Positions 1,682 to 64,000 of a DNA stretch of 64,000 nucleotides are shown piece after piece. Below the pieces are notes generated by a model. It searched no databases, was not told the DNA's origin, and was given only the letters and a program-made list of their open reading frames with translations. Position 1 is the stretch's first letter; every line of letters begins with the position of its first letter. Both the position numbers and the translations under genes were made by a program. The stretch is from Ophelia neglecta (taxonomy: Eukaryota): positions 55,056,001-55,120,000 of the forward strand of contig OZ260663.1 in assembly GCA_965285935.1 (NCBI GenBank), given 5' to 3'.

Positions 1682-2505
1682 CTAGCTCTCTGTGACAGAC
1701 TCATGGATGTTGGTGAGCACAGGCGGGGTGTGGGTGGCATCCTCTCCGTGGGTGTCTGGCTGTTGACTGGGGGGTTCTGGCGGTGAGACGGGATCTGTGA
1801 TGGGCATGACACTCACACTAGGATCCACCCCCAGTGCTGGAGCCTCCTCAGACCTGGTAGGCACTATCTCAATCACAGGTTCATGAGTGGGGACAAATGC
1901 TGGCGGATGCTCAGAGGCCGAAACAGGGGTAGATATATGAGGAGGACGCTCCAGATCTACTGGCTGAGCCATTGGACCTGGAACTTCAGGAGCCAGCTGG
2001 TCTGAAATCAGCACAGCTGACTGTATGGCTGTAGAGGGGGGGATTTCTGGGCATATAGTGGGCACCGCCGCATAGGACATGGCTACCGAGCTGGGTAGAG
2101 TAGCTACGGAAAGGGTTGTTGTTGTATACATGCCATCAGATTGGGGAATGTAGTACGCCGCCGGATATTCACTGGGGGCTGTCCCGTAAGTGCCCTGGGG
2201 CACCTGAACCATGTATTGCTGGTCTGAGGAGTACGCCATGCCTCCAGGGGCAGAGCCGCTGTGATAGGAGGCCACACCACCATCCAGCATCCCTGCCGTC
2301 ATACACGAGTCTCCCATTGGGGCCAGATTGTTGCTGCCTGTTACTCCAGACATATCCATGGAGGCCATGTGTCCTAAGCTATCCAATGAGGAGCCATCGC
2401 TCCCCGGGGACATCATGGCATAGCTTGTCCCAACATAGCCTGCAAGGCCACGGCTGCGGCCAGTGCTCGAACGTCTGCCACGATTCGATGATGAGTTCAC
2501 ATTAC
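1682..2505 (-). CDS. TCF12: Alternative long terminal coding region (~274-aa Ser/Pro/Met/Tyr-rich C-terminal extension)
   Basis: Part of the 311-codon stop-free frame 1682..2617, which is visibly more GC-rich than its flanks. Acceptor ctttgtattttggtgcag|GT at 2506/2505 is phase 1 and matches the phase-1 donor at 4201. Confidence 0.65.
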
Positions 2506-2549
2506 CTGCACCAAAATACAAAGGGCTGTTGTTATAGGCACTGTTAGCA

Positions 2550-2600
2550 TCATAGATGATGCCCCATGTCCATCGGGTATGGTGCCCTATTATCTGGTCC
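2550..2600 (-). CDS. TCF12: Short terminal coding exon [16 protein letters not shown]
   Basis: Acceptor gcctctttccag| at 2601, phase 0 from the donor at 4196. The MGHHL* ending resembles the vertebrate E-protein ending (..PMGHM*). Confidence 0.75.
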   Translation of the reverse strand, partial: GPDNRAPYPMDMGHHL

Positions 2601-5600
2601 CTGGAAAGAGGCAGCAAGAAATCTGCTCAGTTTTGGATTCAGATTAGATTTTAATTGTGTTAATAGCTTCATCTACTGATTACAATGACAAACATGCTGC
2701 TGTGGCTAAATTAGCTAGGCTGGGCTGGGTGTGTAGAGAACTGGACTGGAGGAGACATGGGGCAGTGACTTTTAGTCCTGATTCTATGGAACTCTGTTGA
2801 TTAGGCATACAGCAGAATTGACATAAAACCAGGTCTCAACATTTTAGAAATTTCAAATTTAAATATGGAAAAGAACTCACAGTTTTCCTGAAATAGTCTT
2901 AATTTAAAATCAACTAGATAAGATACCCCCTGAATACTGGGCTAGATGTGTATTGTCTCCACAAACTGAGATTAGTTGGGCATCCACAGGGTTATACTGT
3001 CAAAAAGTAAATTTAGATGGTTAGTAACATGGTATGACTATGTGATCATAGATACCAGCCACCAACCAAGTTCCCCCAAACCATAATCCTTATAATATAA
3101 AGACCACCAATCCAAAGGCCCACCAAAAGACCCTGTAAGAAATCTGCCCACCTCAGAAACCCAAGCCAAGCAATCTATTGCACCAGCCACCAGCTAATAA
3201 ATAGATTAGCATGAAAACATTTTGGTATGAGGTTATGAAGGAAATATTTTGATAATTATTTCTGAGGATGGGCAATGAATAGCATAAATATCTCTGAAAC
3301 ATCACTACATGACATATACTTCCTTCATAACTTCAAAATAATAACTAACATAAATAATGCTGGGTAATAGGATGCCTTAATACATTAAAATATGCAGACT
3401 TTTTCCAATGTTTTACAACCCATACCAAGTTGCAGACCACCCACAATTTCTCTGTAAAAATAAATAAATTCCTTCAAAAAGGAGGAGGTATCCCACCATA
3501 AAATCCACTTCCACCAAACCGTTGTTTCAAATGAGTTAATTAACATATGGCTAACAGCCTTCCATACTTAATTTAAATGAACACTAGTGATCTTAAAGTC
3601 ATCATGACTATTTTCCATCAGACCACACAAAACCTAATGCATCCTGTCACCCATTCATAACAAGCAATGTTTAATTTCATATAAATTTATGTAGAAATAA
3701 TCAACCATTATGTATCAAAATGGTTGATAACTCCTACACACATTGCACTAACATCTCATGCTTTTTTTGGTATTTATATATACAAACATAGTTACAGTTA
3801 AGAAGGTCACCAATGTGTCACTTTTCAGGTCAGCATGGGAGTGGCACATTTCTACACAACATAATAGTTTAAAAAAATATAAAAACAATTCTGCCTTCTG
3901 AACAGGTGTGCCTCTTGATGGCCAACCGATGGTAACACATTGATGACCAATGTTCACTATCATCAGAAAAACCAGGCTCCTAAGTATACACCTTGGCAAA
4001 AAGGAGGTTAACCTAAGATTTATAGCATTTTTATTTAGTGTGCAAATAAAATATGCAGATTGTAAATGGCATCTCCGGTGTTCTTAATGTTTGAAGTTTA
4101 ATTTTTTCTTCTTTTGCTAAGGTGCAGACTCGTGAGGAACTAGGGTATATTGTCTTACATAAAGATAGAGTTAAGTGTGTTTGCCTGATACATACCTTAC
4201 CGGCCATGGCAGCCTGCTGAGCAATGTCCAAAGGAGGTCCCAAGGACCTCCCTGGTAGCTCCTCTGTTTTCTCCTCCTCCCTACGCTTTAAGCATGCTGC
4301 CTTAGGGTTTAAGTTGCGCTCTGGAAATAAGCACACATTAAAATATGAGTTTCAAATTGATAAACTTGACAGATTACTAACTATCAAAACTGCTATTCAC
4401 ACCAAATAGAAACCAGATACACCTGAATATCTTATACTTTATTATTTTATTTATATATATCATACAATAACAATATTTAAAGAAATGTTCCATAGCATGC
4501 TTGAATACAGGCAGACATATAAATACAAAATGCTGTTAGGACATTTTTTTCTTCAATAAACCATAACCAGGGGTTAGTGGCCACTCTAGCTTAATTCTCA
4601 ATTAAAAGCGTTTACACACATAAAATATACACACTTGGGTTAACATAATATAATAATAAATGCTGTTAGTCCACAACAGAACATTACCTCTGACTTGCTG
4701 CTCTAAACTGGTTATTACTGACACTGCATGTTGCAAGATAGTCAGCTTTGTTTGGGGTTTGTCCGTGCTAAGGTGAAGTGAGCACATGCGACCCAATTCT
4801 TTGAAGGCCCCGTTGATATCACGCACACGTATCCTGTGGGGGAAGAGAGAAGACGGGAGTTTGGAGGTTGTTCATGCATGCACTCACATTCATACTAGCA
4901 GAGGTGGATTTAGAAACCATTGGGATAGAGGGGCGAGGGCATTATTGACAAAGTAGGGTTCCCAGGGTATTCCCATACGGACTTGGGTAGGATATGGGGC
5001 ATCTCTCGTAGGATTTTTTTTGGTCAGTGTCAGGGCTTGGGCCCAAGTCTTGCCGAGCAACACGGCTAGTACAATTCCTTCTGCAGCCTCTCAGGACTGT
5101 TCTGGCTTTTTCAAACATGCAAGCAAACCATGCAGAAGCATTCTGTGTCAAGGCCACTTGTAGATCAGGCAATCGGTTGCTTGAGAGTGGTTTTTACCTC
5201 GGACTTGTTGCTCAAGGGTAGTGATGACATTGACTGCCTGCTGCAGAATCATCAGCTTGGTCATCGGCTGACCATTGCTAGTATGGATAGAGATCATGTG
5301 ACCTAACTCTTTGAATGCTTCGTTTATGTCCCGTACTCGTAATCTGTTGGGCAATCCAGTGGCATTGAGAATTAGAATGGACAATACCTTAACAGCATAT
5401 ACAAGAAAACAAGCACAGTAAAAATGTCCAATCAACTGTTTATCATACACTATCAGCAACATAAGAAATTAATTTTCACTTATATTTACTTGTTATTTTT
5501 CCAATTTATATTTTCAGAAAATTGTATGTTCCTTGTTATTCTGTGTACTCCTGTGTCAACTTAGCCAACAACACTTTTGCTCTTTTCTCCGTAAACTTTC

Positions 5601-8600
5601 ATCAACACCAGCTGCCTTTAGCCTTACCTTTCTCTAGCATTATTAGCCTGCCGCCGCAATCGTTCACGCTCTGCTTTAGATTCTGGGCTCTCATTGGGAT
5701 CATCTTCCTCCTCGTTTCTGTAAAAGCCAAACAATCTATCACATCCGTAATAATGGGTGATGAAAATAATTGGCACAATGGCACCCTACCATAATCACAA
5801 GAATTAAAATGGGTTTTCCCAAAATGGACATTAATATAACTTAATGCATCCAGAAACCACATAAGGTGTTGAGAATGCTAAAAACAGGCAAATAATGGGC
5901 AACAGGGAGCTCTTAGAGTGGCTTGTACTAGCACATTCCGCATGTCAATGAGAAGGTTAAATAAAATATTCCCCTCATCACTTGAAGAAGTCCTGAACAG
6001 ATATTCTGATGTGAAATCAACTTACTCTGAATCAAGACTTGGTCCAAGCGAGTCCCTACAATCACAAGGGGAAACAAAAATAACATGAAATGGTAGAAAT
6101 AAAACAAGGTTTTGCCATACACTTTAGAAACCACTACTAGGGTGGAGAGACTGTGAAGACAGGGTGGTATATATGATGATAATGCTACCCTGCTTACACT
6201 GGCCCTACTATGACTTTAGCCATACAGAACATTGACATATTACCAAATGATTACTATTTTGTGCAGCTCATGTGCAAACAAAAGTTAATTAAATAATGCA
6301 AAGGATCCAAAATTTGGATGTTTTAATGGGTGACCTAGTCCATGTGGTCTTTTGGTTGCCTAAGGCTAGTATGTCTGAGAATAATATTAAAGCAAAGACA
6401 GCCATGAAAGCCGAGGAAATATATTAATACTGAGAAATTGTTCATTGGAGGCCTGGGGAAAAAAAGCATAATTTTTACTTAGTACTCTGACAAATAATGG
6501 AGCATTATACAACTTAACCAGTTAGCAAGCGAATCCAAAAAAACATCGAGAAATCAATATGGTTGGCATGCTAGTTTGAAGTGTTAAATACAAGGATATA
6601 TGCCTATATATAAATATATATATCAGGAGAACCCTATCCGTTCAAAGGAACAGATTAGGTTTTTACTGGCTATTATCTCTGAATCACTGAAGAAACCAAG
6701 TTGAAATTGGCTTGTATAAATTTTGAACATTCTGCGACAATAAATAAGCAAATAAAAAACAAAAGAACACCTTATACCAGCAGACTGGTTGGAATTGGCA
6801 TTTATACCAATTAATATCAAAACTATCAACTATATAGTCATTTCCTATCCATATAAAGTTTCTAGTATCTAAATAGAATTTTTATTTTCATTAGTACAAG
6901 TCGACTCAGTGTGCCAGTAGGTTTTTACTTACTGCCTTGATCTTTTGGATGGCGGAGCACCACTCTGTGGTGTCAAAGGAGAAGTCATATCTGACAGTGA
7001 TCCCGAAGTGCGACCAGATTCCTTCATTTTTTGGTCTTTCTTACTACTTTCATCGGCCGTTTTTTCAACTTTCAATTTTTCTATTTTTATGTGGCCATCC
7101 GTAGTTTGTTCTGTTGGTTGTTCATTTCTTAAGTCTATAAATGTGGGTACAAAATATAGATTAGGTAATGGAAATTGAAAGCAAATCAGTGCATGATGAT
7201 AATTAATATACTAGATACATGGTCAGTTTCTGGAATTCTTTATTGCAAGAAAGATATGTTCTTAATACATAAATATGAAGATATTTTATACACAAGGGAT
7301 GCTCCTTCTACACAGTTCTTGTAGATTGTTTATTAATCTATTTTAATGTAAATATATTCTTACTATTGACAGATGATTGATCCGGGCCTGTGTGTCTATT
7401 ATGTGATCGCTCATCTGATAATGATGTGTGGTTGCCACCCTGAAATAATTGAGGAAAATTAATATGTAAATATGATATGTATTATGAGAGCTGCCTGTGA
7501 CTGGGTTGAGTATGAGTGATGGTAGATTATGAGGGAGTGACAGCCTGTTATATTTGACCCTGGGTATATATCTGGCCCTGGGTATATGATGGTTGATTAT
7601 GAGGGAGAGATAGGCTGTTGACCCTGGGTATATGCTGTCCCATGTTACCCTTTTCATCGCCCCGCCTTGTCTGATGAGGCAGGCTGGTTTCCCTGACCCT
7701 CCTCCACCCGTGCCAGCCTCTCCCCACTCCACATGTGTGACTTGTTAGAGGACGCTCCTACTATTAACCACCCTCCCTCTTCACCGCAGTCAAGTTCATC
7801 CCTGGTCACTGAAAACAGGAATAAATGACTCCAACTTTGACCCACACCCTCAAATTTATCCACATGATATTGACTTCCACTGCGTCAGGCACTGCACAGT
7901 GACTTCTCCAATTTGACAGAAGGAGGCAAGAAAATTGCACCTTCAATCTCTCTACACCATTTGCCATCTGGTTGCATTATACAGCATAGGAGGGGACAGT
8001 TTTCAACACTTTGACAGCTACAGAAAGTGAAATCAGAGGCATGTTTTGTTGGAACTGGATACCTGCCATACACCATGATATTAGGTGATATGTGTCAGGG
8101 AGAGAGATGGCACCTGGGTGCGGGGTTGCTCCAGAGCGGTCCTAAGGAGGGCCTCACTACAGGTATGGGGAGCTAGCCATGATACAGCACCATGCCAGCC
8201 CCAGGCCCACTCACAAGCACCTGTTGTACTTCAGCTACTGCTCAGCTACAAGCTGGATACAGTTTCTATCACATCCTCCACATCTACACACCCCACTCCC
8301 ATCAGTATGGTGAATGTCAATTAACCCATCAACACAATGGGACTGGCTCAGACCACCTACAATCATGGATCTCTCTAAAAACCAAGCCAATCAACTATCT
8401 ACACTCATCATTCCATCATACCTACAGCAGCCAATCCTAACTCACACTTCCTCTTGTCATCTCTTTGTTAAAACCATACCTCGCTGCCACATAATGCCAC
8501 ACAGCACTACTTACAACTAGATTTTCTAAATGTTACAGAGAAGGCGTAAGCAAAGGGGGGATTAAAAGAAACTGATCTCCTACCAAATCATAATGGTATC

Positions 8601-11600
8601 CATAGAAGTCCTGTGCATTGGTGTATTGTAGACTGGTATTGTACGGCTGTACTTGGTTTCCATGATATGTATTGTAAGGTAGAGTGGTATTGTTCTGTAG
8701 AGAGCCTTGCTGGTCCTGAATGGCACTCGGGTTGTATTGTGCAGCGTTGTTGTACCACGTACCACCTGAGGCGTACCCCTGTTGGTAGGCTGGTGGGAAC
8801 TGGGATATATCCAGTGGAAACTGGGAATACCACATGGTGCCGTTTCTCACACCATTAGCCACTAAAATATATCCAAATAGCTAAAGGAAGCTAGGACTGT
8901 CAGTGGAATTAAGGCTCATTAAGTTTCCTTGAAGTCATCAAGGGAGGAGAGCTTTGCCAATAAAGATGGTTGTATGACGGGTCCTTAGCCTGCTCTGGCC
9001 CTTCCCCTTCCGATCCAAGCCTACTCCCAGCCTACTCCACTCTGAAGCTTTTTCCAAATCTTTCACGATATGCTGGCTTGATTTGTTCAAGACCTGCCCA
9101 TCTTGAAGTATTTTGTACCAGTTGAATATACACAGATGGAAAACATTGGAAACAATTATCTTTGAAGCAGCTCATTGAGCAATATTGACCAACAGTCATA
9201 GAGAGCAGCATCCAATCACAGGGGCACAATCTTACCATCAGAACTTGGAAACCCAACTAGCCAGATACTTGGGGGCTTTGGAAAGATAACATCTAGCATA
9301 ACTGGTTACATGTGGTTCACATTATCTATGATGTTGAGATATACCATCTGAGCACTCAACATGTAATTTTTTTGAACTTTTTCTTACACACCCTTATGCT
9401 AATGCCCTTGGCACAGTTTTAATTTGAAAGCCATGCAATCACACACCATTGCCTGGAATGCGACTTTCAAGCATTTTGGGCCTGTGGTTTTCAAGATGAG
9501 TGTACATGCCTGCTATGTGGGAGTGCGACCAGTGATTTTGCCACTGTATATTTTGAATGATGTGCGAGGACATCTGAGCAGGTATGATATGATGTATTTA
9601 TATTACCCTCCTCTGTTCCTGCCGTTTTTCTAGAACATGTTTGATCTGTTTTGACACAAGAAGCAGAGACTCCTTCCCACTCCTTCCCAGCAACAGTTCT
9701 ACCTTGACACATGTAGTTGCTATGGAAACCAGGGGATCAACCCATCAATAATTACTTTCAGAGTGATCTGATGGGCAGATCTGAGAGGCGGCTGATGTTT
9801 ACACTGGTGACTTTGTAAACTGTAGATTCTCAGGGAGGTGGGTAGGGTTCCCTGCCTTTGACAGTTACAAAATAAACAAAGTGGCCTCAGTAGCTCCAGA
9901 TGTTGTGTACATCTCTGGCAGATACTAGCCTTCTGTGCTGGTCCCAGTCTTCTCTACAGACTAATTAGCTCATTTAGATAATCTCTCATCAAATGTAAGC
10001 AGAATACTCCTTGAAATATCATGGCGTTCTCTATGATGAAAGTTGGCTCAGCTTGGGCTTCAAACGAGCAGGGTCATGTTATGAGAACACATCAAAATGC
10101 TCACCTGGTTTCAATCAGGATCATCCTGGAGTAAGACAGCTCAGCAAGCTTTATGAGCACTATTTACCAAATTCATCTTCACTATGTGATGATCCCAGCC
10201 TCTTTAACGTGCTAAAAGGTGTCCATGCCTTCCACTAAAGCATCTTTGGAGAGCAATTCTCTCAAACCATGATCTTGAAGGTCAGCACAAGTAATTTCAG
10301 ATAAAGAATTTATGGAACTACAGATTTTTATTGTATATTGTCATATTTCCCCCCTTAGAGCAGTCAGGGCCAATTATGGCCTCAATAATGGAGTAGTGTT
10401 TCTGATGTAAATAAATCACCTGCCCTGGCCAGTCTGTTATAGATGAGTAGTCCAGCTGAGCCCAAGTGTTCGTGTTCATTTGCTTGTATGACATCACTTT
10501 GTAGATGTATCCCTCAGCTGTGTCTAAAACCTGAAGCAGGCCTCCATTACAGTACAGCACAGGCAGCCGACCCCTGCAACTTTGGTCAATATTTTGAGAC
10601 AGTATAACCCCGAGGTATGGCACCTTGTCAGAGCCCTGCTTCCAATTGCCCCGCTATTTACAGAGAAGACCCTGTGTAATTTTCCCCATACTTTCCATAA
10701 TTTTCCCCATACTTTCCTTTCGGTAATTAGCCATTAAATCGAGATGCCCCTGTGATTTTATTGGCTCCATCTTTGCTAGTAAAGCGATTCCTGGTTGTTT
10801 CCTGCCCAGTTGTTCTGTGGGGTTTGTGTAGTGGCTACAAGAGAAGATTGGCATAAGGGCAGAGAGAAACAACAAATTTGCATTCTCCGGTAGACCACAC
10901 GCGCTTGGGGGTTAATTCTGCACAGGACTGAAGCTCAAAACCTGTGGTGAACTCTTATTGGAGGGACAGAGGACTGAGAATAAATTCTAATCATCAGTAA
11001 TTGTTTGATGACTAGACTGTCAAAATGAAATCACAGCCTACCAGTTTCATGTCAATCATACAATCTCTCTGACTTACATCTTACAAAACTGATGACAACA
11101 AAAAGGCAATTGCTCAAATGTCAAGCAGCAACATACTAAAACAATTATTTATTTATAATGTTTTTTTTATCACTGTCCAAAATAGTTTGTGTATAAATAA
11201 TGTATGATAAAGTTCTTGCACACAAAATTAATGACTCGTAGGTTTTCTTATTTATCGTATAAGCAGGCAATATCTTACCATGTGTGATTCCATCATGCCC
11301 ATGCCCGGCGGGTATGCTGTGCCCATGTTGCCGGACATGAAGCCATTGGAATGTGGTCCGGGCATCATCCCGGGCATGTGCCCAGGGGGCATCATTTGGC
11401 CTGACTCCGCATGGTTTCGTAAGACATGGATGGCATCGTCCAGCCGTTCCTCCATTTTGCTTTGCTATAAGAAAATATCTTGGTAATAATACGTTGACAA
11501 TTTATTTTCAGGCATTGTCATTTTTGTTAATGCCAGTTAAGTTGGAATCCTTGTTAGTAACATTGAAACATTTATATGTTTTACTAGAAGTGATGAGGTG

Positions 11601-14600
11601 CTATGTAGAAAAAGGTTTTATTAGTTCAAATTTATGTTGTAAATGCTACAAGGCCAGATATTTGATAGGTGTACAATGTGGTTAGAACTGGTCATTCTAG
11701 AAGGTTCCTTTGAGGAAATGTTTCGGACCCATTTATCAGATGAGACCGGCCATTTTCACATCAGTTTCAAGATACCTGCCAGGTCCTGAGATTCTCAATT
11801 TCTGCTCCAAATTAGCAAGACCTGCAAACTCAAATATCTCAGATTTCCTTTGGACATTCGAAAATGTAATGGGTAATACTATTCAGCAGTTGTCAATTAG
11901 TGGGAACCACATATCTCCAAAACTCCGGGGTTCTGGTGCCTACTACTGTGTGATGAGGCTTCCTGCTGCCCGAAGCTTGGCCAATACATATTTTCATGAA
12001 TATTTAGGATTTATCCCAGCAGGTCACTCTGGTTAAAATGTATTCTATTTCTTTGTAGAGCTGGAGGTGGCTCTGGCTTAAACTTGCCATTTTCTCATCA
12101 ATTTGGAGGTAGCTATTGAGTTAGCATCCTGATAGACCATTTTTACCCTGACTTTCACCCAAAGTGGTTGACGTCTGCCAGGATGGTATTGTTTATCTTG
12201 GCACCTTTTTCTTCCTCCCTCAGTAGATTTCTCTTCCCCCACCAAATCTGTTACCCATCTGATGTACAGGTAAAAAACTCAGGCTGGGTGCAGCCTATAA
12301 AACATCAGTGTTTGTCTTGTCAGAAAATGTTTCCACATGTGCAAGATGTGTACAAATGTCAAAACTTTTATTACCGCTGTTCATTTCAATAACAGACAGA
12401 ATTTTGGTGCGATCTTGCCTAAATATTGATAGGATTTGCCCAGCATGAAAGGTGACGATATGCTTTCCAGATATGCCTTGATCTGTTGTATTGATGACAG
12501 CTTCCCAACACTCAAATCTACATCTATGAGCCTTTTTTGAATGCTAACCACAGAAATACAAATCCAAGCAGAGAACTACACTAAAAGAGACTGACATATT
12601 ACAGGGCATAAATTAATTAAAAGCCAACCGACACCCAGCAGTCCAACACCTTTATCTAATATGCTAAACCACAGTAGTTCTACAAAACTTCTTTATAGGC
12701 TCTCTCACCATATCTCAGAAAGATAAAATGCATTTTCAAAAGCCAATGATGCCATCACCCTGCTCAAGCTACTCATTATGTGGTAATCAATCCGTGTGTA
12801 TTTGTGTGCACCATGCATCCCTGGACCTGTATCAGGTACTCTTAATAACAAGCCTTTAATTTATCTTTTCAATGCAAAGTTTTTGAGGTAAAATGCATCC
12901 GATGTTGGGGTTACCTCTGCCTGGTCCCGTAAATAGTGAATAGCATCATCTAACTTCTCTTCCATTCTTGAAGTCTATTGGCCAGTGTGAAAAAACACCA
13001 AAGATGATTTGCGATGGACACAACTCTTATTAATGCTTATTATGGTCATTTTATGAATTAGTTAGTCAGGTAACACATTAAGTGCCCAGAGATGAGACAT
13101 GTTTGTTTAACACCAGTGCCACAGGAATGTTAAAGAAAACTGTGAAACTTCCCAATTATTGCTGTGTGCCGACCAGTCAATATACTGATACACAAAATTA
13201 AATACAACATGCAAAAAAATGTGAACTAGAACTAGAATTAAAAGTAGCAATAACAAACTACAACCATCAAGTTATAAACATCAAGATGCAGGAGCAAATC
13301 TACAATTCTACCACTATCAATACTCCTGGACTGGCCATTCAGAGCTCGCCGCTATCACCAACTTCTTACATTTACACACAAGGCGTTGTATATATATATA
13401 TATATATGTATGTCTTCGCCTGTCCATGCTTGGTGAAACTTTACAAATTTACCAGATTAGAATCTACAAAATACCAGAATATGGATTTACAGGCTCTTGA
13501 CTTCTAAATTTATAAACAGATTGCAATTTAGGAAATACTATAATGCAATAGAAATTAAGTAGATGCTTAAGTAAATCAGAATGTATTTCAAAAAGCATGG
13601 TCAGAGCAGAACTGATTTACTAAAGAATGGGTGAATAAAAGTGTTGATTTACATTTGGCCGGCTTACCAGTGAGTGGAGGTGGCTTTCAAAATGGGGTGA
13701 GGTAGTGCTTGTGGTGGCTGGCCCCGGCCGCGCCCACTGCTGGCTTGGGGGACCTGAAACAATGGTGAGAACATGGTGAGATCAGGGAGAGGACATGGTG
13801 AGAACACAGTGAAAACAGGGTGAGAATTAAGTAAGGGTGAGAATAAGTTGGAGAAACTAAATGAGACTTGGTCGGGACTTAAAGATACTGAGAGTGGAAC
13901 ATAATATCAATTACACCAAATCTATAATATGAGCTTGTTTTTTCTGTTTTATGCACAGTTCATTTTCATCCTGAAAGGTTTGGGATTTAAACATAATTTA
14001 AAACAAATTCAATCAACAGGGTTTTTATTTTAATTAAATCAAAGTGTAAAAAACAGGGCACTTGCATATATTTATAATTAACGACTAAAACATGGATTAA
14101 TATCCTAAACAGATAGATTGCTTTTTCCCAAATTACAGAAATACTGAAAGGCACCGAAAATCGGAATGGCTCCAAAAAAAATCGGTCTTCGAAAACTAAA
14201 GTGCAGATTATTTATGACCAACATTTTGAAGAGTTTCCTGTTATAATGGTCTCTCTAAGTATATTGAGGATGTCTGTATCCACTAAACACAAATGCTCTC
14301 CAACTGGTAACAGCTGATCAGGTGATTAAGGGCAGCAAACACAACAAGGCAATTGTTTTCTTGCTCAATGGTGCATCAAAAGGGCCTCAGATGGTGGGCG
14401 TGGGGAAGTGCCCTCGGAGAATTAGGGCCAAGAAGCTGTGAATGAGGGACAGCTCTGACATACTGTTGCCAGGTAGTACACATGGACAAGTGTACTAGAT
14501 GGTTTGCTCTCACTGATCACCAGCAGACTAGGGCTGGTGGAATTACACAGCAGCAATTGTTTCTTGTCCTGATTCCCAAACAGATTTGTTTATACACAAA

Positions 14601-59600: not shown

Positions 59601-62600
59601 CAGAGTGGACTTGACATATACTTGTATAGTTAATATGGTAGATTAGTTTGTGTCCACTATGATTAACAATAACTGACAAAGACTTTATGTATCTACACGA
59701 ACATTAAGATGGTGTGTACTTTATCAGTTAACATTGCTTAAATGTAAATAATACAATTTTATCTGAAAATGAATAATAATAGTAAAGGCTTCTCAAAACC
59801 ATCAATGTTTACTTTAGACAATATTCATATTATAATATAAATTGATCCTTGTGCATGAAAAATTCATCAGTCTAGGTAGGCTCTGGCTCCTGTGAAATGT
59901 CATAATTGAGAAAATATGATGTCTACTAACACGAAGGAGACCTGCTAGGATCTTCCGGCAGTTTCATGTTGACTTTTGCGAGTGCCCAAAATATTAGTTC
60001 AACGACTTTAGCCACTATCGGTGCAGGATTGGTCACAAATCGGCAGAGAATCATGCCGTCTCGTAAACCTATCCTTGCCATTTAGCAGCCGGAGACATGT
60101 ACTTTACAAACAAGACCCGAGCGATGCTGCAGCAACAGGGAGGTAGCCAGGTTAAAGTTTCTCTAAAACAACAGTTAATTCTGTAGAGGTGAATGCTATC
60201 ACAGAACATCAGAACGTAGTGTCTGGCTCCTGTGACTTCGAAACCTTGAGAAAACTGCCCCAGGATAAATTTATATCCCTTGGTCAATGGAGAGAGTTGG
60301 GGGTTATGTGACTTGATAGTAGCTACACTGATTCTAGGGAGAACATTCTTGAAACCTATTCCATAGGTCAAGATGCACAAAAACAATCCAATCTGACAAT
60401 ACAGCACAGAATTATATATCCATTTACTCCAGATCTGACTATCTGTGCAATATCAAACTACATTTATCCATAGGTCATCAAAATAACCCTGATATTCCTC
60501 TCTCTCTTTCCCACCCTAAAATACAACTCTACCAAAATATCAAGATGTTTCAGTAGTGTAACAAATTCACCGAGACTTTGGTAGAATGGCCAGTTGATTG
60601 TTTAACTCAGATTTGTGATCCCAGAGGAGGCTATAAAATCTTGGAAACCCTGACTGCCCATATAACTATTGCTAATAGCGGGCTAAATCCATGGCAACCA
60701 TCTCTCATTTTGCCATAAATCACACATGCCTAGCTTGCAAGGTCTGAGCATGAAATTAAATCTACAACCTAGGCATCCATGTGCATTGTGCTGGAGAAAT
60801 GCTTCCTGTAAATGTGAAGTCTCCAAACCATAAACTACCTTATGGACTTTTTGTCTTTACGTAAATTTGTTTCATCTCATCATTGCAGGAAAGAAATAAT
60901 TTTCTATTTTTTTTTCTTCAAATACAAATTTCCTAAGAATTACCCATAAAATATTTTATATTACAAATGATCCAATGTGGTGGCAAACTGGCTATGCACG
61001 GAAGTAAAGCATACTGGTATTTAATTTTGAAAACTGAACTCTCAGTTTTCAACACATTGATAATGAACATTTTAAGTAAAACTGTCCAACAATGACCTCC
61101 AATCTATATCTGATCAGCTGAGGTTCCTCACATCAGATGCCCGGTAATTAACCTGAGGGAGGGCAATTCATGTATTCTACTAAGAATTAACTTTAAGCAC
61201 ATACTTGAAAGCCCTATTCCTGCCAAATTGAATGGAATTTTCTTATATATGTGTCAATATTTACACAGAATTATGCTGATGGTAAGCAGTTAGGCTTTTT
61301 GAGCTAATGAAGTGGGCTGTGTTCATTCACCAGAACAGAATCTCTTCAGAAAATGGCCCGTAAATCATACAGCTATTTACTGGCAACATGATTTCATTGC
61401 TAACCTCTCCGAGCAATTGGTGTGAAAATGCTGATCCAGTTATTCCTAATGAATAATCATTGAATGGCTATGAACATAGGCCTGACTTAATACTTTGTAT
61501 ATTTGTTTGATCAATCTTTGTAGTATGTACTTTTGACACAAGAAAGGCATTTAGTTGAACTCCCTACAGCCATGACTGAGCCTGCCCCTAATACAAACCT
61601 AATAAAATATATGCAATAGTGGAGACTGTGTGGTACACTTGAGACACCTTTGGCCTGTTGATTTTTCGTTAACTACAGGTACTTGTATTTGTATAAAAGA
61701 ACACACACAAAAAAGATATATGTGTTCATGCACTTTTACATCAGAAATATAACGAAAGGTTTTTAACTTACAGTAAAGAATTTTGATTACAAAATAACCC
61801 CCCTCAAAGCTTCAATAAAACTTGATTTCAACCACTCTAATTGTGTTGTTTGTTCATTCGTGAACTCAATTTCCAATTACTAAAATTCCATTAGCAGTAA
61901 TTAAACAAGATTTCCCTTGGTATTCATCATTTGTTCATTGGAGGATGGATATATTAAGAGAACTACCAATCTAAAGAATCATCTGGCCATATAGAGCATG
62001 TCAGACAATAAATGGGGATGAACAATACGTCTAGGAAAGTGTGCTGCAGATCATTAGGGCTGTCCATCCAAAAGGAGAGAACTGGTGGACAAAAGTCAAG
62101 TAACAAAAGGTGATTCCACCTGACTGAATGTCTAAAGGTGTCTTCCTATTTCAACCAGTCCAGCAGACCAATGAGACGTATTAAATGTTTAAATACAAAC
62201 GCCTGGTTATACTGGAGGGGAGTTGTGATAATATGTGTCTTTACATACGGTAATTAAGGGTTCAGGTGCCCTTTAGCCCCACTAGCACACAAGCCGTGAG
62301 AAGCTACCTTGAGGTGACTCAATTGGCAAGCCAACCAAACTATTACCTAGCGGGAAGTTCATATCGCCATAGCAACTCAACAAAAGGGCCTGCCTTCAGT
62401 TGACATTGACAGGCTTAAAGCTTTGACAAACAGTGAGGTTCACGTTCACGCTTAGCCTCCTCCTTGCATACCTATCACATTATTTTGCATATTCATGAGG
62501 CTCGGATCATGTATCTTTAAGTATAATGGCTGGTGACGAAAACTATCATAACTTTGTAATTCTTTATCAAACCAATTTTATTCCTATGAAAGTAATAGGA

Positions 62601-63003
62601 TGCACATGTGACATGTACTTTTCAGATGAGATAAGTTGAGAATTTGGCAAGTACGCCCAACAAGCAATCGAAATGTGTATAAAGTGATATTCCACTATCC
62701 TCCTCCCATGTACTAGTCAATCACTCATACAAAATGGCTGTTTAAATACCAGAGGCGCCAGGCAGTCTGGCTCGACTACCTCACTGGGCCAGCCGGCTAT
62801 TTTTAGTCAAGGCAATCCGCAGTGATCCCCAGAATTTCCTCAAATCTTACCAACAATGAATCACACTAGGAAAAAGATTTAATTTCAAGAAAATTAATAA
62901 GACTAGGAAAAGCAGATTACTCACGACATGAGCTTCGATAGTACGGATTTTGGTAATAGGGATGGTGTCCATGATGGTATGGTTGCTTTTGATATGGGTA
63001 CAT
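2550..63003 (-). CDS. TCF12: Multi-exon class I bHLH E-protein gene (TCF3/TCF4/TCF12/daughterless family); AD1-coding 5' end probably outside the window
   Basis: Chain of GT-AG-bounded exons with consistent phases. Encodes family hallmarks: [69 protein letters not shown]-(L/I)RVRDIN-AFKELG...[24 protein letters not shown]. Symbol is for the most similar-looking vertebrate paralogue; likely co-orthologous to TCF3/4/12. Confidence 0.96.
4196..4320 (-). CDS. TCF12: C-domain exon (E)[40 protein letters not shown](K); tandem donors at 4201 and 4196
   Basis: Acceptor ttatttccag|, invariant E-protein C-domain motif, donors CCG|gtaagg and AAG|gtatgt. Confidence 0.95.
4688..4833 (-). CDS. TCF12: HLH exon B (mutually exclusive): [48 protein letters not shown]
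   Basis: 146 nt, phase 2 in and 1 out. Acceptor tctctcttcccccacag|, donor GAG|gtaatg. Intact E-protein HLH. Confidence 0.95.
4873..5134 (-). promoter_or_regulatory. Four UGCAUG (Rbfox) splicing elements between HLH exons A and B
   Basis: CATGCA on + at 4873-4878, 4877-4882, 5116-5121 and 5129-5134. Confidence 0.65.
5198..5343 (-). CDS. TCF12: HLH exon A (mutually exclusive): [48 protein letters not shown]
   Basis: 146 nt, same phases as exon B. Acceptor cccaacag|, donor GAG|gtaaaa. Open frame, 34/48 aa identical to exon B. Confidence 0.92.
5628..5717 (-). CDS. TCF12: Acidic plus basic-region exon [29 protein letters not shown](R)
   Basis: 90 nt, phase 2-2. ttttacag| and AAG|gtaagg. E-box-reading RRxANNARER motif. 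Confidence 0.95.
6933..7134 (-). CDS. TCF12: Exon [24 protein letters not shown]...PPSKRSR(Q)
   Basis: 202 nt, phase 1-2. tttatag| and GCA|gtaagt. IKxE motif at the equivalent position to vertebrate IKTE/IKSE. Confidence 0.9.
7364..7439 (-). CDS. TCF12: Exon [25 protein letters not shown]
   Basis: 76 nt, phase 0-1. ttatttcag| and ATA|gtaaga. Required to bridge the phases of its neighbours. Confidence 0.85.
7500..7635. repeat. Degenerate local repeat
   Basis: ccctgggtatat x3 and gattatgagggag x2. Confidence 0.65.
8584..8880 (-). CDS. Candidate cassette exon encoding a 99-aa Tyr/Asn/Gln-rich low-complexity segment
   Basis: Open frame starts exactly at acceptor cttcctttag| (phase 0) and reaches donor TTG|gtagga (phase 0). 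Second acceptor atattttag| at 8861 (phase 1). Strongly biased composition. Confidence 0.5.
9716..9729. promoter_or_regulatory. RFX X-box GTTGCTATGGAAAC
   Basis: Fits the 14-bp X-box consensus GTHNYY-AT-RRNAAC. FOX-type motifs nearby: TGTTTAC 9796-9802 and ATAAACAAA 9872-9880. Confidence 0.45.
10677..10717. repeat. 21-bp tandem duplication
   Basis: taattttccccatactttcc(a) x2. Confidence 0.8.
11279..11464 (-). CDS. TCF12: AD2 helix exon [30 protein letters not shown]...MESHM
   Basis: 186 nt, phase 0-0. ttcttatag| and ATG|gtaaga. Conserved [12 protein letters not shown]. Confidence 0.95.
12915..12974 (-). CDS. TCF12: 60-nt cassette exon, duplicate AD2 helix [20 protein letters not shown]
   Basis: ccaatag| and GAG|gtaacc, phase 0-0. 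13/20 aa identical to the start of the next exon. Absent from the ORF track. Confidence 0.88.
13668..13753 (-). CDS. TCF12: Exon (G)[28 protein letters not shown]
   Basis: 86 nt, phase 1-0. gtttcag| and CTG|gtaagc. Resembles TCF12 SQWPRPGG..SPSYENSLHSL. Confidence 0.92.
13762..13855. repeat. Degenerate ggtgagaa repeat in the pyrimidine tract upstream of exon 13753
   Basis: Repeated (g)gtgaga(a) units, UUCUCACC in the pre-mRNA. Confidence 0.55.
14290..14492. promoter_or_regulatory. Intronic E-box cluster (8 CANNTG)
   Basis: CAAATG 14290, CAACTG 14301, CAGCTG 14311, CAGGTG 14319, CAATTG 14350, CAGATG 14388, CACATG 14479, CAAGTG 14487. Confidence 0.4.
14801..14882 (-). CDS. TCF12: Exon [27 protein letters not shown]
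   Basis: 82 nt, phase 0-1. tatttcag| and CAG|gtaaga. Resembles [22 protein letters not shown]. Confidence 0.94.
15047..15094. repeat. 24-bp tandem duplication
   Basis: gatctgctcaagatattaaaccaa followed by gatctgctcaaggcattaaaccaa. Confidence 0.85.
19339..19569 (-). CDS. TCF12: Exon GYHPMSP...[10 protein letters not shown]...[15 protein letters not shown]
   Basis: 231 nt, phase 0-0. tttttgcag| and TCT|gtaagt. Conserved LPPMSSF, PPING and [10 protein letters not shown]. Confidence 0.95.
21425..21576 (-). CDS. TCF12: Exon (D)[50 protein letters not shown]
   Basis: 152 nt, phase 1-0. tttcatcag| and ATG|gtaagt. DG..DPWS motif as in TCF4. Confidence 0.9.
23756..23890. mobile_element. Possible non-autonomous transposon fragment with internal repeats
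   Basis: CpG-rich patch in a CpG-poor intron. ggtgaaagg(c/t)ga x3 (23782, 23802, 23871) and hairpin ggcgaa/ttcgcc. Family not identified. Confidence 0.35.
24591..24696 (-). CDS. TCF12: Exon [35 protein letters not shown]
   Basis: 106 nt, phase 0-1. tttttccag| and CAG|gtaaaa. Resembles VYAPSP..RESPSYPSPK. Confidence 0.93.
27102..27161 (-). CDS. TCF12: Alternative first coding exon [20 protein letters not shown] (HEBAlt/TCF4-A 'Alt'-like)
   Basis: ATG-initiated 20 codons ending at TCA|gtaagt, phase 0 into the VYSPS exon. Same position and similar start to vertebrate MYCAY(P/T)...YYYNGK. Confidence 0.82.
43075..43124 (-). CDS. TCF12: NLS exon (G)[16 protein letters not shown]
   Basis: 50 nt, phase 1-0. 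tatttccag| and TCA|gtaagt. Basic cluster at the position of vertebrate KKVRK. Confidence 0.88.
43944..44093. repeat. Degenerate minisatellite, about 3 copies of a 55-65 bp unit
   Basis: tggctNgctcta...attgcaattYatatcctac repeated, with an internal (atatg)n run. Confidence 0.65.
44508..44610 (-). CDS. TCF12: Exon [34 protein letters not shown]
   Basis: 103 nt, phase 0-1. tcttttcag| and GAG|gtaaag. KPGSxYY motif. Confidence 0.9.
51899..51922 (+). repeat. Poly(A) tract
   Basis: About 24 consecutive A. Confidence 0.85.
52042..52097 (-). CDS. TCF12: Exon [18 protein letters not shown]
   Basis: 56 nt, phase 1-0. tttttcag| and CAG|gtaagt. YSRD motif as in TCF12. Confidence 0.85.
54392..54476 (-). 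CDS. TCF12: Exon [28 protein letters not shown]
   Basis: 85 nt, phase 0-1. cttttccag| and TGA|gtaaga. Resembles SPTPFMNSNLM. Confidence 0.87.
54941..55053 (-). CDS. TCF12: Gly-rich exon [37 protein letters not shown]
   Basis: 113 nt, phase 1-0. gttgcag| and AGG|gtaagt. W...PSY..R ending as in the vertebrate exon. Confidence 0.88.
62925..63003 (-). CDS. TCF12: Probable alternative first coding exon [26 protein letters not shown] (in-frame upstream ATG at 63030 also possible)
   Basis: 79 nt, donor GTC|gtgagt, phase 1 matching the exon at 55053. Non-random Tyr/His/Pro composition, no upstream pyrimidine tract. Confidence 0.65.
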
Positions 63004-64000
63004 TCTCGACCAGCAAGACTCTCCTATCATTACTATGTGTAAGCCACGCTCACTTTCAACACAGTTCCTGCTATTCCAATACACACTTCTAATTATCCAA
63101 TAAATCAGTGACAAGGGAATTCCATGCTCAAAATGTCCTATGTAGAGTTCCTCGGCAAACTTCTGGCTGTATTTTTGCTTGTCCTCTGTGGCAAACTATG
63201 TACAAGTATGAATGCAAACAGAGCTGACTGCACGTTATCGCACCTTTCTCCTCTGGCCGCGAGGGAACCCCAGGTCTCAATTTAAATATTTGTTCTTTGC
63301 AGCTATGTTTATCTACGTCACTTGAGTCTGTCATATAACATAAGAATTTATCCTTTTGCCCTCAGCCAATAGCTGTCTTATCATTTGCAGATCTCCGAAG
63401 TTATAAACTATGCGCAAGGATTGCCTGTTCGAGGGGATCATTCACAACTTTTATCACTTCAAAAAAGTTGCTTACACCAATCCATTTTTCAACAGGGAAC
63501 ACCAATAACACAAAGCAAACTTTTTAACAGCGAATATACGTCTATTAACACAAACTGGTAAACATGCTTTACAAGTTACAGACGACTTACATACACAATT
63601 AGGGGCTAAGGGTACAAAAGCAGTGATTCCCTCAAGATTGTTTGGAATGCCTCTACCTTTGCCCCCACCCACATTAGGAGATTCCGCTGTACAGTGTGTG
63701 AGAGGGCCCATAAATTGTACCCTTGTGTCACACAAACAAAGGTCCCTGCCTCTCCGAGGGTGTAGAGTTGCACGTTCAGGTCATTTATCACACATAGAGA
63801 GGTATTCCCTGGTGCCGCTATGTCTAGCTGGGCAAACTCTTAGCCAATCAACAAATAGTTGTGACTCAGCAAGCATGACCGAGTTAGCTTGGCTTGGTAG
63901 ACATGCTGGCGCCCAAACAACCCAATACATAATACAGCTGCTAGTAAAATGCATGCAATCTAGGGACTCTCTCTTATCTGAGACTTGGCTAGTAAAAAAA

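What the first reader, a model, noticed from the sequence alone, without database searches (positions are those of the whole stretch)
4688..5343. Tandem mutually exclusive HLH exons: an E12/E47-like switch built differently from vertebrate TCF3
Seen: two intact 146-nt exons with identical phases (2 in, 1 out) and 14/48 aa differences. Including both frameshifts to a TGA inside exon B; skipping both gives a TAA early in the C-domain exon; so exactly one must be used. Known: vertebrate TCF3 swaps a whole acidic+basic+HLH exon (E12/E47), while TCF4, TCF12 and daughterless have one bHLH. Here an extra intron splits the basic region at ARE(R)|, so the [10 protein letters not shown] segment and acidic patch are shared and only the distal basic residues plus the dimerisation surface are exchanged. 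Inference: an independently evolved partner-selection switch in a single-E-protein animal. I cannot check whether it is already described.
Basis: partly seen in the sequence, partly recalled or inferred. Interest (0 to 1): 0.92.

Follow-up and report, generated by a model that had tools for sequence, protein, structure and literature searches.

The report
Two alternative HLH exons, E-protein gene
The only E-protein (TCF3/4/12, daughterless-type) gene found in this invertebrate genome carries two adjacent, interchangeable 146-base exons for the helix-loop-helix dimerisation domain. The pair is real, but it is an old feature shared by annelids, molluscs, ribbon worms and flatworms and already visible in public isoform annotation, so it is not an invention of this animal.

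Summary
On the minus strand, a 90-nt acidic/basic exon (5717-5628) is followed by two 146-nt HLH exons, A (5343-5198) and B (4833-4688). Both have AG/GT sites and identical phases, and they share 34/48 residues. Using both exons, or neither, runs into a stop codon.

Each exon is under purifying selection (pN/pS 0.12 and 0.17 against a tubeworm). Synonymous sites between A and B are saturated.

The interpretation needs correcting. This is not a local invention:
- The same basic-A-B-C layout is in Ridgeia.
- A-type exons form one strongly supported group across annelids, molluscs, nemerteans and flatworms.
- RefSeq isoforms of Lineus longissimus differ almost only by A versus B.
- Spliced transcript contigs of relatives use A or B alone.
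- The "extra" intron at ARE(R) is old: lobster has the same intron and two 146-nt exons.

Independence from vertebrate E12/E47 is favoured by the duplicated unit, exon order and taxon distribution. The 48-column exon tree cannot decide it.

No RNA data exist for this organism, and I found no paper describing the switch. My verdict is a conserved lophotrochozoan E12/E47-like switch: a new variant of a known kind, of moderate interest.

The parts
5628..5717 (-). Shared acidic patch and proximal basic-region exon (90 nt, phase 2 in and 2 out), ending ...RRQANNARE + AG of the Arg codon
   Evidence: It is the only copy in the window. It matches the basic exon of Ridgeia, Lamellibrachia, Haliotis and Tubulanus.
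5198..5343 (-). HLH exon A (146 nt): the derived, lophotrochozoan-specific A type (GHM..H...GQPMTKLM). It has a weak, purine-interrupted polypyrimidine tract upstream.
   Evidence: It falls in the A-type group with 100/97 support. pN/pS is 0.12 against Ridgeia A. The defining positions are 15, 24, 25, 27 and 31.
4688..4833 (-). HLH exon B (146 nt): the ancestral-like type (GRMC..HL...DKPQTKL), with a strong polypyrimidine tract upstream
   Evidence: It is 85% identical to Lineus B and 79% to Ridgeia B. pN/pS is 0.17.
4834..5197 (-). 364-nt intron between A and B, too long for steric exclusion and with U2-type GT-AG ends
   Evidence: No complementarity above chance was found.
4196..4320 (-). 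Shared C-domain exon ([17 protein letters not shown]...). It has two candidate donors 5 nt apart: the exon ends at 4201 (phase 1) or at 4196 (phase 0).
2550..2600 (-). Short C-terminal end of the coding sequence (17 codons including the stop), reached from the donor at 4196
   Evidence: The same C-terminal motif is in the transcript-derived proteins P0015 and P0246.
11279..11464 (-). AD2 ([11 protein letters not shown]) exon of the same gene, which identifies it as a class I E protein

Best explanation
This is the bHLH-coding end of the only E-protein (class I bHLH) gene found in a spiralian animal, probably an annelid-like one. Exons A and B are spliced in a mutually exclusive way. Both join the same upstream exon, which carries the acidic patch and the first half of the basic region, and the same downstream C-domain exon. 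Exclusivity is enforced at least by the reading frame: double inclusion or double skipping creates an early stop and presumably leads to nonsense-mediated decay. The result is two isoforms with identical activation domains and proximal DNA-reading residues but different helix 1 ends, loops and helix 2 starts, that is, different dimerisation and loop surfaces. B keeps the general bilaterian E-protein sequence. A is a derived type fixed before annelids, molluscs, nemerteans and flatworms diverged. At positions that are otherwise nearly invariant, A has lost an Arg (15), an acidic residue (24) and a Lys (25), and usually the helix 1 Cys (17). The likely function is a partner-choice or homodimer-versus-heterodimer switch analogous to E12/E47. 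It most likely arose by a separate exon duplication from the vertebrate one. Shown here: the gene structure, frame logic, conservation, selection and use of either exon in transcripts or isoform models of relatives. Inferred: use of both exons in this species, decay of aberrant forms and the biochemical difference.
For: Structure and frames. Both exons are HLH domains closest to TCF4/E2A chains. Only one E locus was found in the genome. Ridgeia has the same basic-A-B-C layout with the same phases, and a Lamellibrachia model reads through A then B. The A type forms one group with 100/97 support across four phyla, with five defining positions. Selection: pN/pS is 0.12 for A and 0.17 for B against Ridgeia, and 0.12 and 0.13 against transcript contigs, while A against B has pS 0.91. 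Transcript-level use in relatives: the intronless contig L004 (annelid, nearest Lamellibrachia and Ridgeia) joins basic to B to C, and L005 joins basic to A to C. Lineus longissimus RefSeq isoform X2 carries A and X1 and X3-X8 carry B, with the same flanks. Ostrea and Gigantopelta isoform pairs differ only inside this exon.
Against: There is no RNA evidence for this organism. The only runs found are DNA contigs, and they did not even cover the HLH exons. RefSeq XP models are automatic predictions, and I could not see their read support. In some relatives only one type is annotated: Dimorphilus, Owenia and Patella show A only, and Octopus shows B only. Usage may therefore be very unequal, or one exon may be lost in some lineages. 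The functional difference between A and B is inferred from sequence alone. The role of the helix 1 cysteine in E2A homodimers is recalled from Benezra 1994, whose title is confirmed, but the residue assignment comes from memory.
Confidence: 0.8

Rival explanations
1. The A/B pair is homologous to vertebrate E12/E47 or to the crustacean pair. On this view a single ancient duplication in the bilaterian or protostome ancestor was later remodelled, by intron loss and re-duplication of the basic region in vertebrates, and lost in many lineages.
For: AU tests do not reject trees that hold A with E47 (p 0.59), A with E12 (p 0.63) or A with crustacean exon 1 (p 0.34). Lobster shares the exact intron position, the 146-nt exon length, the phases and the tandem layout.
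Against: E12 and E47 group together (82/83), and the arthropod exons group together (96/89). None of the five A-defining residues occurs in E12, E47 or either arthropod exon. The derived copy is upstream in spiralians but downstream in crustaceans. Vertebrates duplicate the acidic, basic and HLH parts as one exon. Hemichordates, echinoderms, amphioxus, chelicerates, a myriapod and a priapulid show one type only in annotated proteins.
Confidence: 0.15
2. One of the two exons is a silent or decaying duplicate in this species, and only the other is spliced.
For: No transcript data exist for this organism. Exon A has a weak polypyrimidine tract. Several relatives have only one type annotated.
Against: Both exons are intact with canonical sites. 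Both show pN/pS of 0.12-0.17 over saturated synonymous divergence. Both have orthologues used in spliced transcripts or isoform models elsewhere.
Confidence: 0.04
3. The frame-breaking combinations (A+B, or neither) are themselves the regulated product: unproductive splicing used to tune E-protein dosage, with A or B acting partly as a poison exon.
For: Both aberrant combinations give early stops. The 364-nt intron allows double inclusion.
Against: This does not explain the strong protein-level conservation of both exons across phyla. It could at most be an added layer. No supporting transcripts were seen.
Confidence: 0.05

Closest known systems
Vertebrate TCF3 (E2A) E12/E47 mutually exclusive exons
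   Same: An E-protein gene with two adjacent homologous exons, one of which must be chosen. The choice swaps the HLH dimerisation surface, and the activation domains and C-domain are shared (PMC6795145, PMC6120717; read-through models P0007 and P0008).
   Different: In vertebrates each alternative exon carries its own acidic patch and complete basic region. Here the basic exon is shared and only 48 residues plus the junction Arg codon are swapped. E12 and E47 both keep R15, C17 and K25, whereas exon A does not. The vertebrate pair sits in one of three paralogues, while here it sits in the only E gene found.
Lophotrochozoan E-protein isoforms already in public annotation (for example Lineus longissimus XP_064645673.1, A type, against XP_064645674.1, B type; the Ridgeia piscesae locus)
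   Same: The same shared basic exon, the same A-then-B order and the same defining residues. These are orthologous exons.
   Different: None in kind: the window is another member of this set. Oysters have three A-like exons, and several molluscs, Owenia and a cephalopod also have alternative or extra basic-region exons, which this window lacks.
Crustacean daughterless orthologues with tandem HLH exons (Homarus americanus locus L007; Amphibalanus, Darwinula, Cyprideis models)
   Same: The basic exon ends at ARE+AG. Two tandem 146-nt exons have the same phases and a short intron between them.
   Different: In crustaceans the upstream exon is the ancestral arthropod type, as in ticks, spiders and myriapods, and the downstream exon is the derived daughterless type, which is the only one seen in insects. 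Neither shares the A-type residues. The tree places both arthropod exons together.

Membership tests
Class I bHLH E proteins (E12/E47, TCF4, TCF12, daughterless, HLH-2) | HLH domain most similar to E-protein HLH domains | tested here: met
   Pfam PF00010 for both exons. The best solved-structure matches are TCF4 and E2A chains, E 4e-16 for A and 4e-18 for B.
Class I bHLH E proteins (E12/E47, TCF4, TCF12, daughterless, HLH-2) | E-protein basic region (RRxANNARER) preceded by an acidic patch, and the C-domain motif [17 protein letters not shown] | tested here: met
   Both motifs are shared with named E proteins of many phyla.
Class I bHLH E proteins (E12/E47, TCF4, TCF12, daughterless, HLH-2) | AD2 / loop-helix activation motif ([11 protein letters not shown]) upstream in the same gene | tested here: met
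   ORF at 11252-11455, and tblastn of Ridgeia, Haliotis and Tubulanus proteins.
Mutually exclusive exon pair | Adjacent exons of equal length and phase, homologous in sequence, with canonical splice sites | tested here: met
   146 nt each, 65% nucleotide and 71% protein identity, AG/GT sites.
Mutually exclusive exon pair | Joint inclusion or joint skipping is not viable | tested here: met
   Stops appear in both cases.
Mutually exclusive exon pair | Transcripts that carry one or the other exon, in this organism | not testable with these tools
   No RNA run was found, and the DNA contigs do not cover the exons. In relatives the feature is met.
Homologue of the vertebrate E12/E47 exon pair | The duplicated unit contains the acidic patch, the whole basic region and the HLH | tested here: not met
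   There is one shared basic exon, and only the HLH exon is duplicated.
Homologue of the vertebrate E12/E47 exon pair | A and B group separately with E12 and E47 | tested here: inconclusive
   The free tree joins E12 with E47 (82/83) and sets A apart (100/97), but AU tests reject no alternative. Only 48 columns are available.

The most novel reading that the evidence does not exclude
The 146-nt HLH exon of the E-protein gene may have been duplicated and turned into a one-or-the-other switch at least three separate times: in vertebrate TCF3, in Pancrustacea and in the lophotrochozoan stem. In each case one ancestral-like copy was kept and one lineage-specific copy was created. On this reading the lophotrochozoan A type is a second class I dimerisation specificity more than 500 million years old and not yet studied. 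The bHLH of insect daughterless would descend from the derived crustacean-type copy after loss of the ancestral exon.
Probability: 0.5. Interest if true: 0.7.

Novelty: new variant of a known kind. Interest (0 to 1): 0.58.

Why it matters
E proteins are the common dimerisation partners of the tissue-specific bHLH factors (achaete-scute, MyoD, Twist, NeuroD and others) and the targets of Id/emc. In animals with one E gene it is usually assumed that there is one E partner. A conserved choice between two HLH surfaces would mean that annelids, molluscs, nemerteans and flatworms have two class I partners from one gene. That affects how proneural and myogenic networks in these model animals should be read and perturbed, because knock-downs and in situ probes normally hit both isoforms. 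It would also be a clear case of repeated evolution of the same splicing solution at the same exon. For this particular window, however, it is one more instance of a feature already present in public annotation of related species.

Tried and rejected
- **Reads.** The look-up of sequencing runs returned only three runs of one sample, none on record as RNA. Read laying showed them to be genomic contigs covering only 5417-5800, with no joints. The tool did not refuse any place, and after that call I sent no window letters of this region to any database search.
- **RNA-structure control of exclusivity.** An inverted-repeat search of the A/B introns gave 11 pairs, about the number expected by chance for this length and seed. 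Ridgeia showed no matching arrangement. Rejected as unsupported.
- **Exon phylogeny as a test of homology with E12/E47.** A tree was built, but AU tests cannot reject A+E47, A+E12 or A+crustacean exon 1. Reported as inconclusive.
- **Deuterostome loci.** Look-ups for the Ptychodera and Dimorphilus proteins found no record. The amphioxus hit is an intronless gene and says nothing about exon structure.
- **Literature.** Searches of the library found only the vertebrate TCF3 work and no description of invertebrate HLH exon switching. The library is incomplete, so this is not proof of absence.
- **Earlier findings of this scan.** Nothing was relevant.
- **Spliced model.** All searches used single exons by reference or database proteins. 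The joined step was left out.

Full report
**What is there.** The gene lies on the minus strand. Reading:
- A 90-nt exon (5717-5628) encodes an acidic patch and ...RRQANNARE and ends with AG of an Arg codon.
- Two 146-nt exons follow: A (5343-5198) and B (4833-4688). Each is preceded by AG and followed by GT. Each supplies the third base of that Arg codon and leaves one G for the next codon.
- The next exon (from 4320) starts the conserved C-domain [17 protein letters not shown].
- The two 48-residue translations are both HLH domains (PF00010). Their closest solved relatives are TCF4 and E2A.
- Using both exons puts B in a frame that stops after 29 codons. Using neither stops the C-domain exon after 5 codons.

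A search of the animal's own 762-Mb assembly with exon B finds only these two places. One E gene is therefore likely, with the caveat that the tool's counts are lower bounds. Upstream exons, including the AD2 motif [11 protein letters not shown], map up to about 54.5 kb in the window.

**Neither exon is decaying.**
- Between A and B, synonymous sites are saturated (pS 0.91) while pN is 0.18, so the duplication is old.
- Against the orthologous exons of the tubeworm Ridgeia, pN/pS is 0.12 for A and 0.17 for B.
- Against two transcript contigs of other relatives, it is 0.12 and 0.13.
It does not answer it for splicing in this species.

**The pair is not peculiar to this animal.** An exhaustive profile search with exon A returned many gene models from other species that contain two HLH stretches, that is, read-through of tandem exons. 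Naming them shows the following:
- A-type exons, recognisable by G[HQS]M..H...QP[LM]TKLM, occur in annelids (Dimorphilus, Ridgeia, Lamellibrachia, Owenia), molluscs (Haliotis, Nucella, Mytilus, Solemya, chiton, limpet, oysters), nemerteans (Tubulanus, Lineus) and flatworms (Macrostomum, Taenia, Echinococcus, Cichlidogyrus).
- B-type exons (GRMC..HL...KPQTKL) occur beside them in Ridgeia, Lamellibrachia, Lineus and the flatworms, and alone in annotated Octopus proteins.
- In the Ridgeia locus the order and phases are the same as here: basic exon, A, B, C-domain exon.
- In a maximum-likelihood tree of 51 exon translations, all 21 A-type exons form one side of a branch with 100/97 support.
- Five positions separate A from every other E-protein HLH examined: 15 (Arg lost), 24 (acidic residue lost), 25 (Lys replaced by Gln), 27 (Gln replaced by Leu/Met) and 31 (Met). 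In addition, position 17 is almost always Cys outside the A type and Val/Ile in it.
- So B is the ancestral-like exon and A is a derived exon fixed before these phyla diverged.

**One-or-the-other use in relatives.**
- Contig L004 (4,257 nt, intronless) comes from an annelid whose nearest named relatives are Lamellibrachia and Ridgeia. It joins basic exon, B and C-domain.
- Contig L005 joins basic exon, A and C-domain.
- In RefSeq, Lineus longissimus isoform X2 carries A while X1 and X3-X8 carry B, with identical flanks.
- Isoform pairs of Ostrea edulis and Gigantopelta aegis have equal length and differ only inside this exon.
- Tubulanus X1 and X3 also carry different HLH exons between identical flanks.
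- These are automatic models, but together with the transcript contigs they make mutually exclusive use the normal state in the clade.
- For the window's own species I could not test it. The only runs found are genomic contigs of one sample, and they cover only 5417-5800.

**Relation to E12/E47.**
- The free tree joins E12 with E47 (82/83) and keeps A apart.
- However, AU tests reject neither A+E47 (p 0.59) nor A+E12 (p 0.63). Forty-eight columns cannot decide, and I report this as inconclusive.
- Other evidence favours separate origins:
  - The vertebrate unit carries its own acidic patch and full basic region, whereas here these are shared.
  - No A-defining residue occurs in E12 or E47.
  - Annotated proteins of hemichordates, echinoderms and amphioxus show a single type.
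- I put independence at about 0.7-0.8.

**The "extra intron" is old.**
- In the lobster locus (L007) the basic exon also ends ...ARE+AG. It is followed by two tandem 146-nt exons with the same phases.
- There the upstream exon is the type seen in ticks, spiders, horseshoe crabs and a myriapod. The downstream exon is the daughterless type, which is the only one seen in insects.
- Barnacle and ostracod models show the same pair.
- The tree places both arthropod exons together (96/89), and the derived copy lies downstream rather than upstream.
- A third, separate duplication is therefore the simplest reading, though AU does not exclude a shared protostome origin (p 0.34).

**How it most likely works.**
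- Shown here: the frame logic forces a choice between A and B. The two products share everything except the junction residue, the end of helix 1, the loop and the start of helix 2.
- Inferred: aberrant combinations are removed by nonsense-mediated decay.
- Inferred: the weak polypyrimidine tract before A and the strong one before B (the same tendency in Ridgeia) suggest that A needs activation.
- Inferred: the loss of Arg15, the acidic residue at 24, Lys25 and Cys17 in A changes partner preference or the homodimer-heterodimer balance. The cysteine idea rests on Benezra 1994 (title seen), and the residue assignment is from memory.
- I found no support for RNA-structure control.

**Novelty.**
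- Searches of the paper library found only vertebrate TCF3 work. The lophotrochozoan switch may therefore be undescribed in print.
- It is, however, already encoded in public isoform sets.
- For this window it is a further member of that set. As a phenomenon it is a differently built, probably independent version of the E12/E47 switch.

Noticed in passing
window 1682-2617 (-), with 4196-4201 and 2505-2507: A 311-codon ORF lies in the last exon, in a frame other than the short C-terminus. The alternative donor 5 nt upstream (exon ends at 4201, phase 1) joined to an internal acceptor (exon starts at 2505) would put 274 codons in frame and give a long C-terminal isoform. The annelid transcript contig L004 has a 306-codon second ORF at the same place, starting with a similar Arg/Ser-rich ...MSP.SD.SL.S motif. 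Molluscan isoforms (Haliotis, Solemya) also have long tails after AQQAA[LM]AG.
   Followed up: partly
window 12912-12971 (-): A small cassette exon encodes a second copy of the AD2 motif ([18 protein letters not shown]), upstream of the main AD2 exon (11279-11464). Lamellibrachia has both copies in tandem, and Dimorphilus isoforms differ by the presence of such a segment. This looks like another duplicated, optional exon in the same gene.
   Followed up: partly
L007:55833-63056 (Homarus americanus): The lobster daughterless orthologue has a basic exon ending ARE+AG and two tandem 146-nt HLH exons (62483-62628 ancestral arthropod type, 62911-63056 daughterless type). Insects show only the daughterless type, while chelicerates and a myriapod show only the ancestral type.
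   Followed up: partly
proteins P0157, P0220-P0233, P0211 (oysters); P0191/P0326 (Gigantopelta): Oysters have three tandem A-like HLH exons, used alternatively in RefSeq isoforms. The snail Gigantopelta has two A-like exons. No B type was seen in these sets.
   Followed up: no
proteins P0167, P0046, P0239, P0071, P0295, P0249/P0282, P0286: Several molluscs, the annelid Owenia and a cephalopod transcript have a second, alternative or additionally included basic-region exon. Examples are an extra ...NNARE segment inserted between the basic exon and the HLH in Haliotis X3, and two basic copies in scallops and a chiton. This window has only one basic exon.
   Followed up: partly
L006:3001-5061 (Branchiostoma hybrid assembly): The amphioxus E-protein model found is encoded by an uninterrupted 2,061-nt ORF. 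It may be a retrocopy, which would imply more than one E-type gene in amphioxus.
   Followed up: no
window 4530-4538, 4660-4668 and 5390-5398: The 9-mer TAACAGCAT (RNA sense) occurs twice in the intron after exon B, and its complement occurs once about 50 nt before exon A. Pairing would loop out both exons. The overall number of inverted matches in the region is at chance level, and Ridgeia shows no equivalent.
   Followed up: partly
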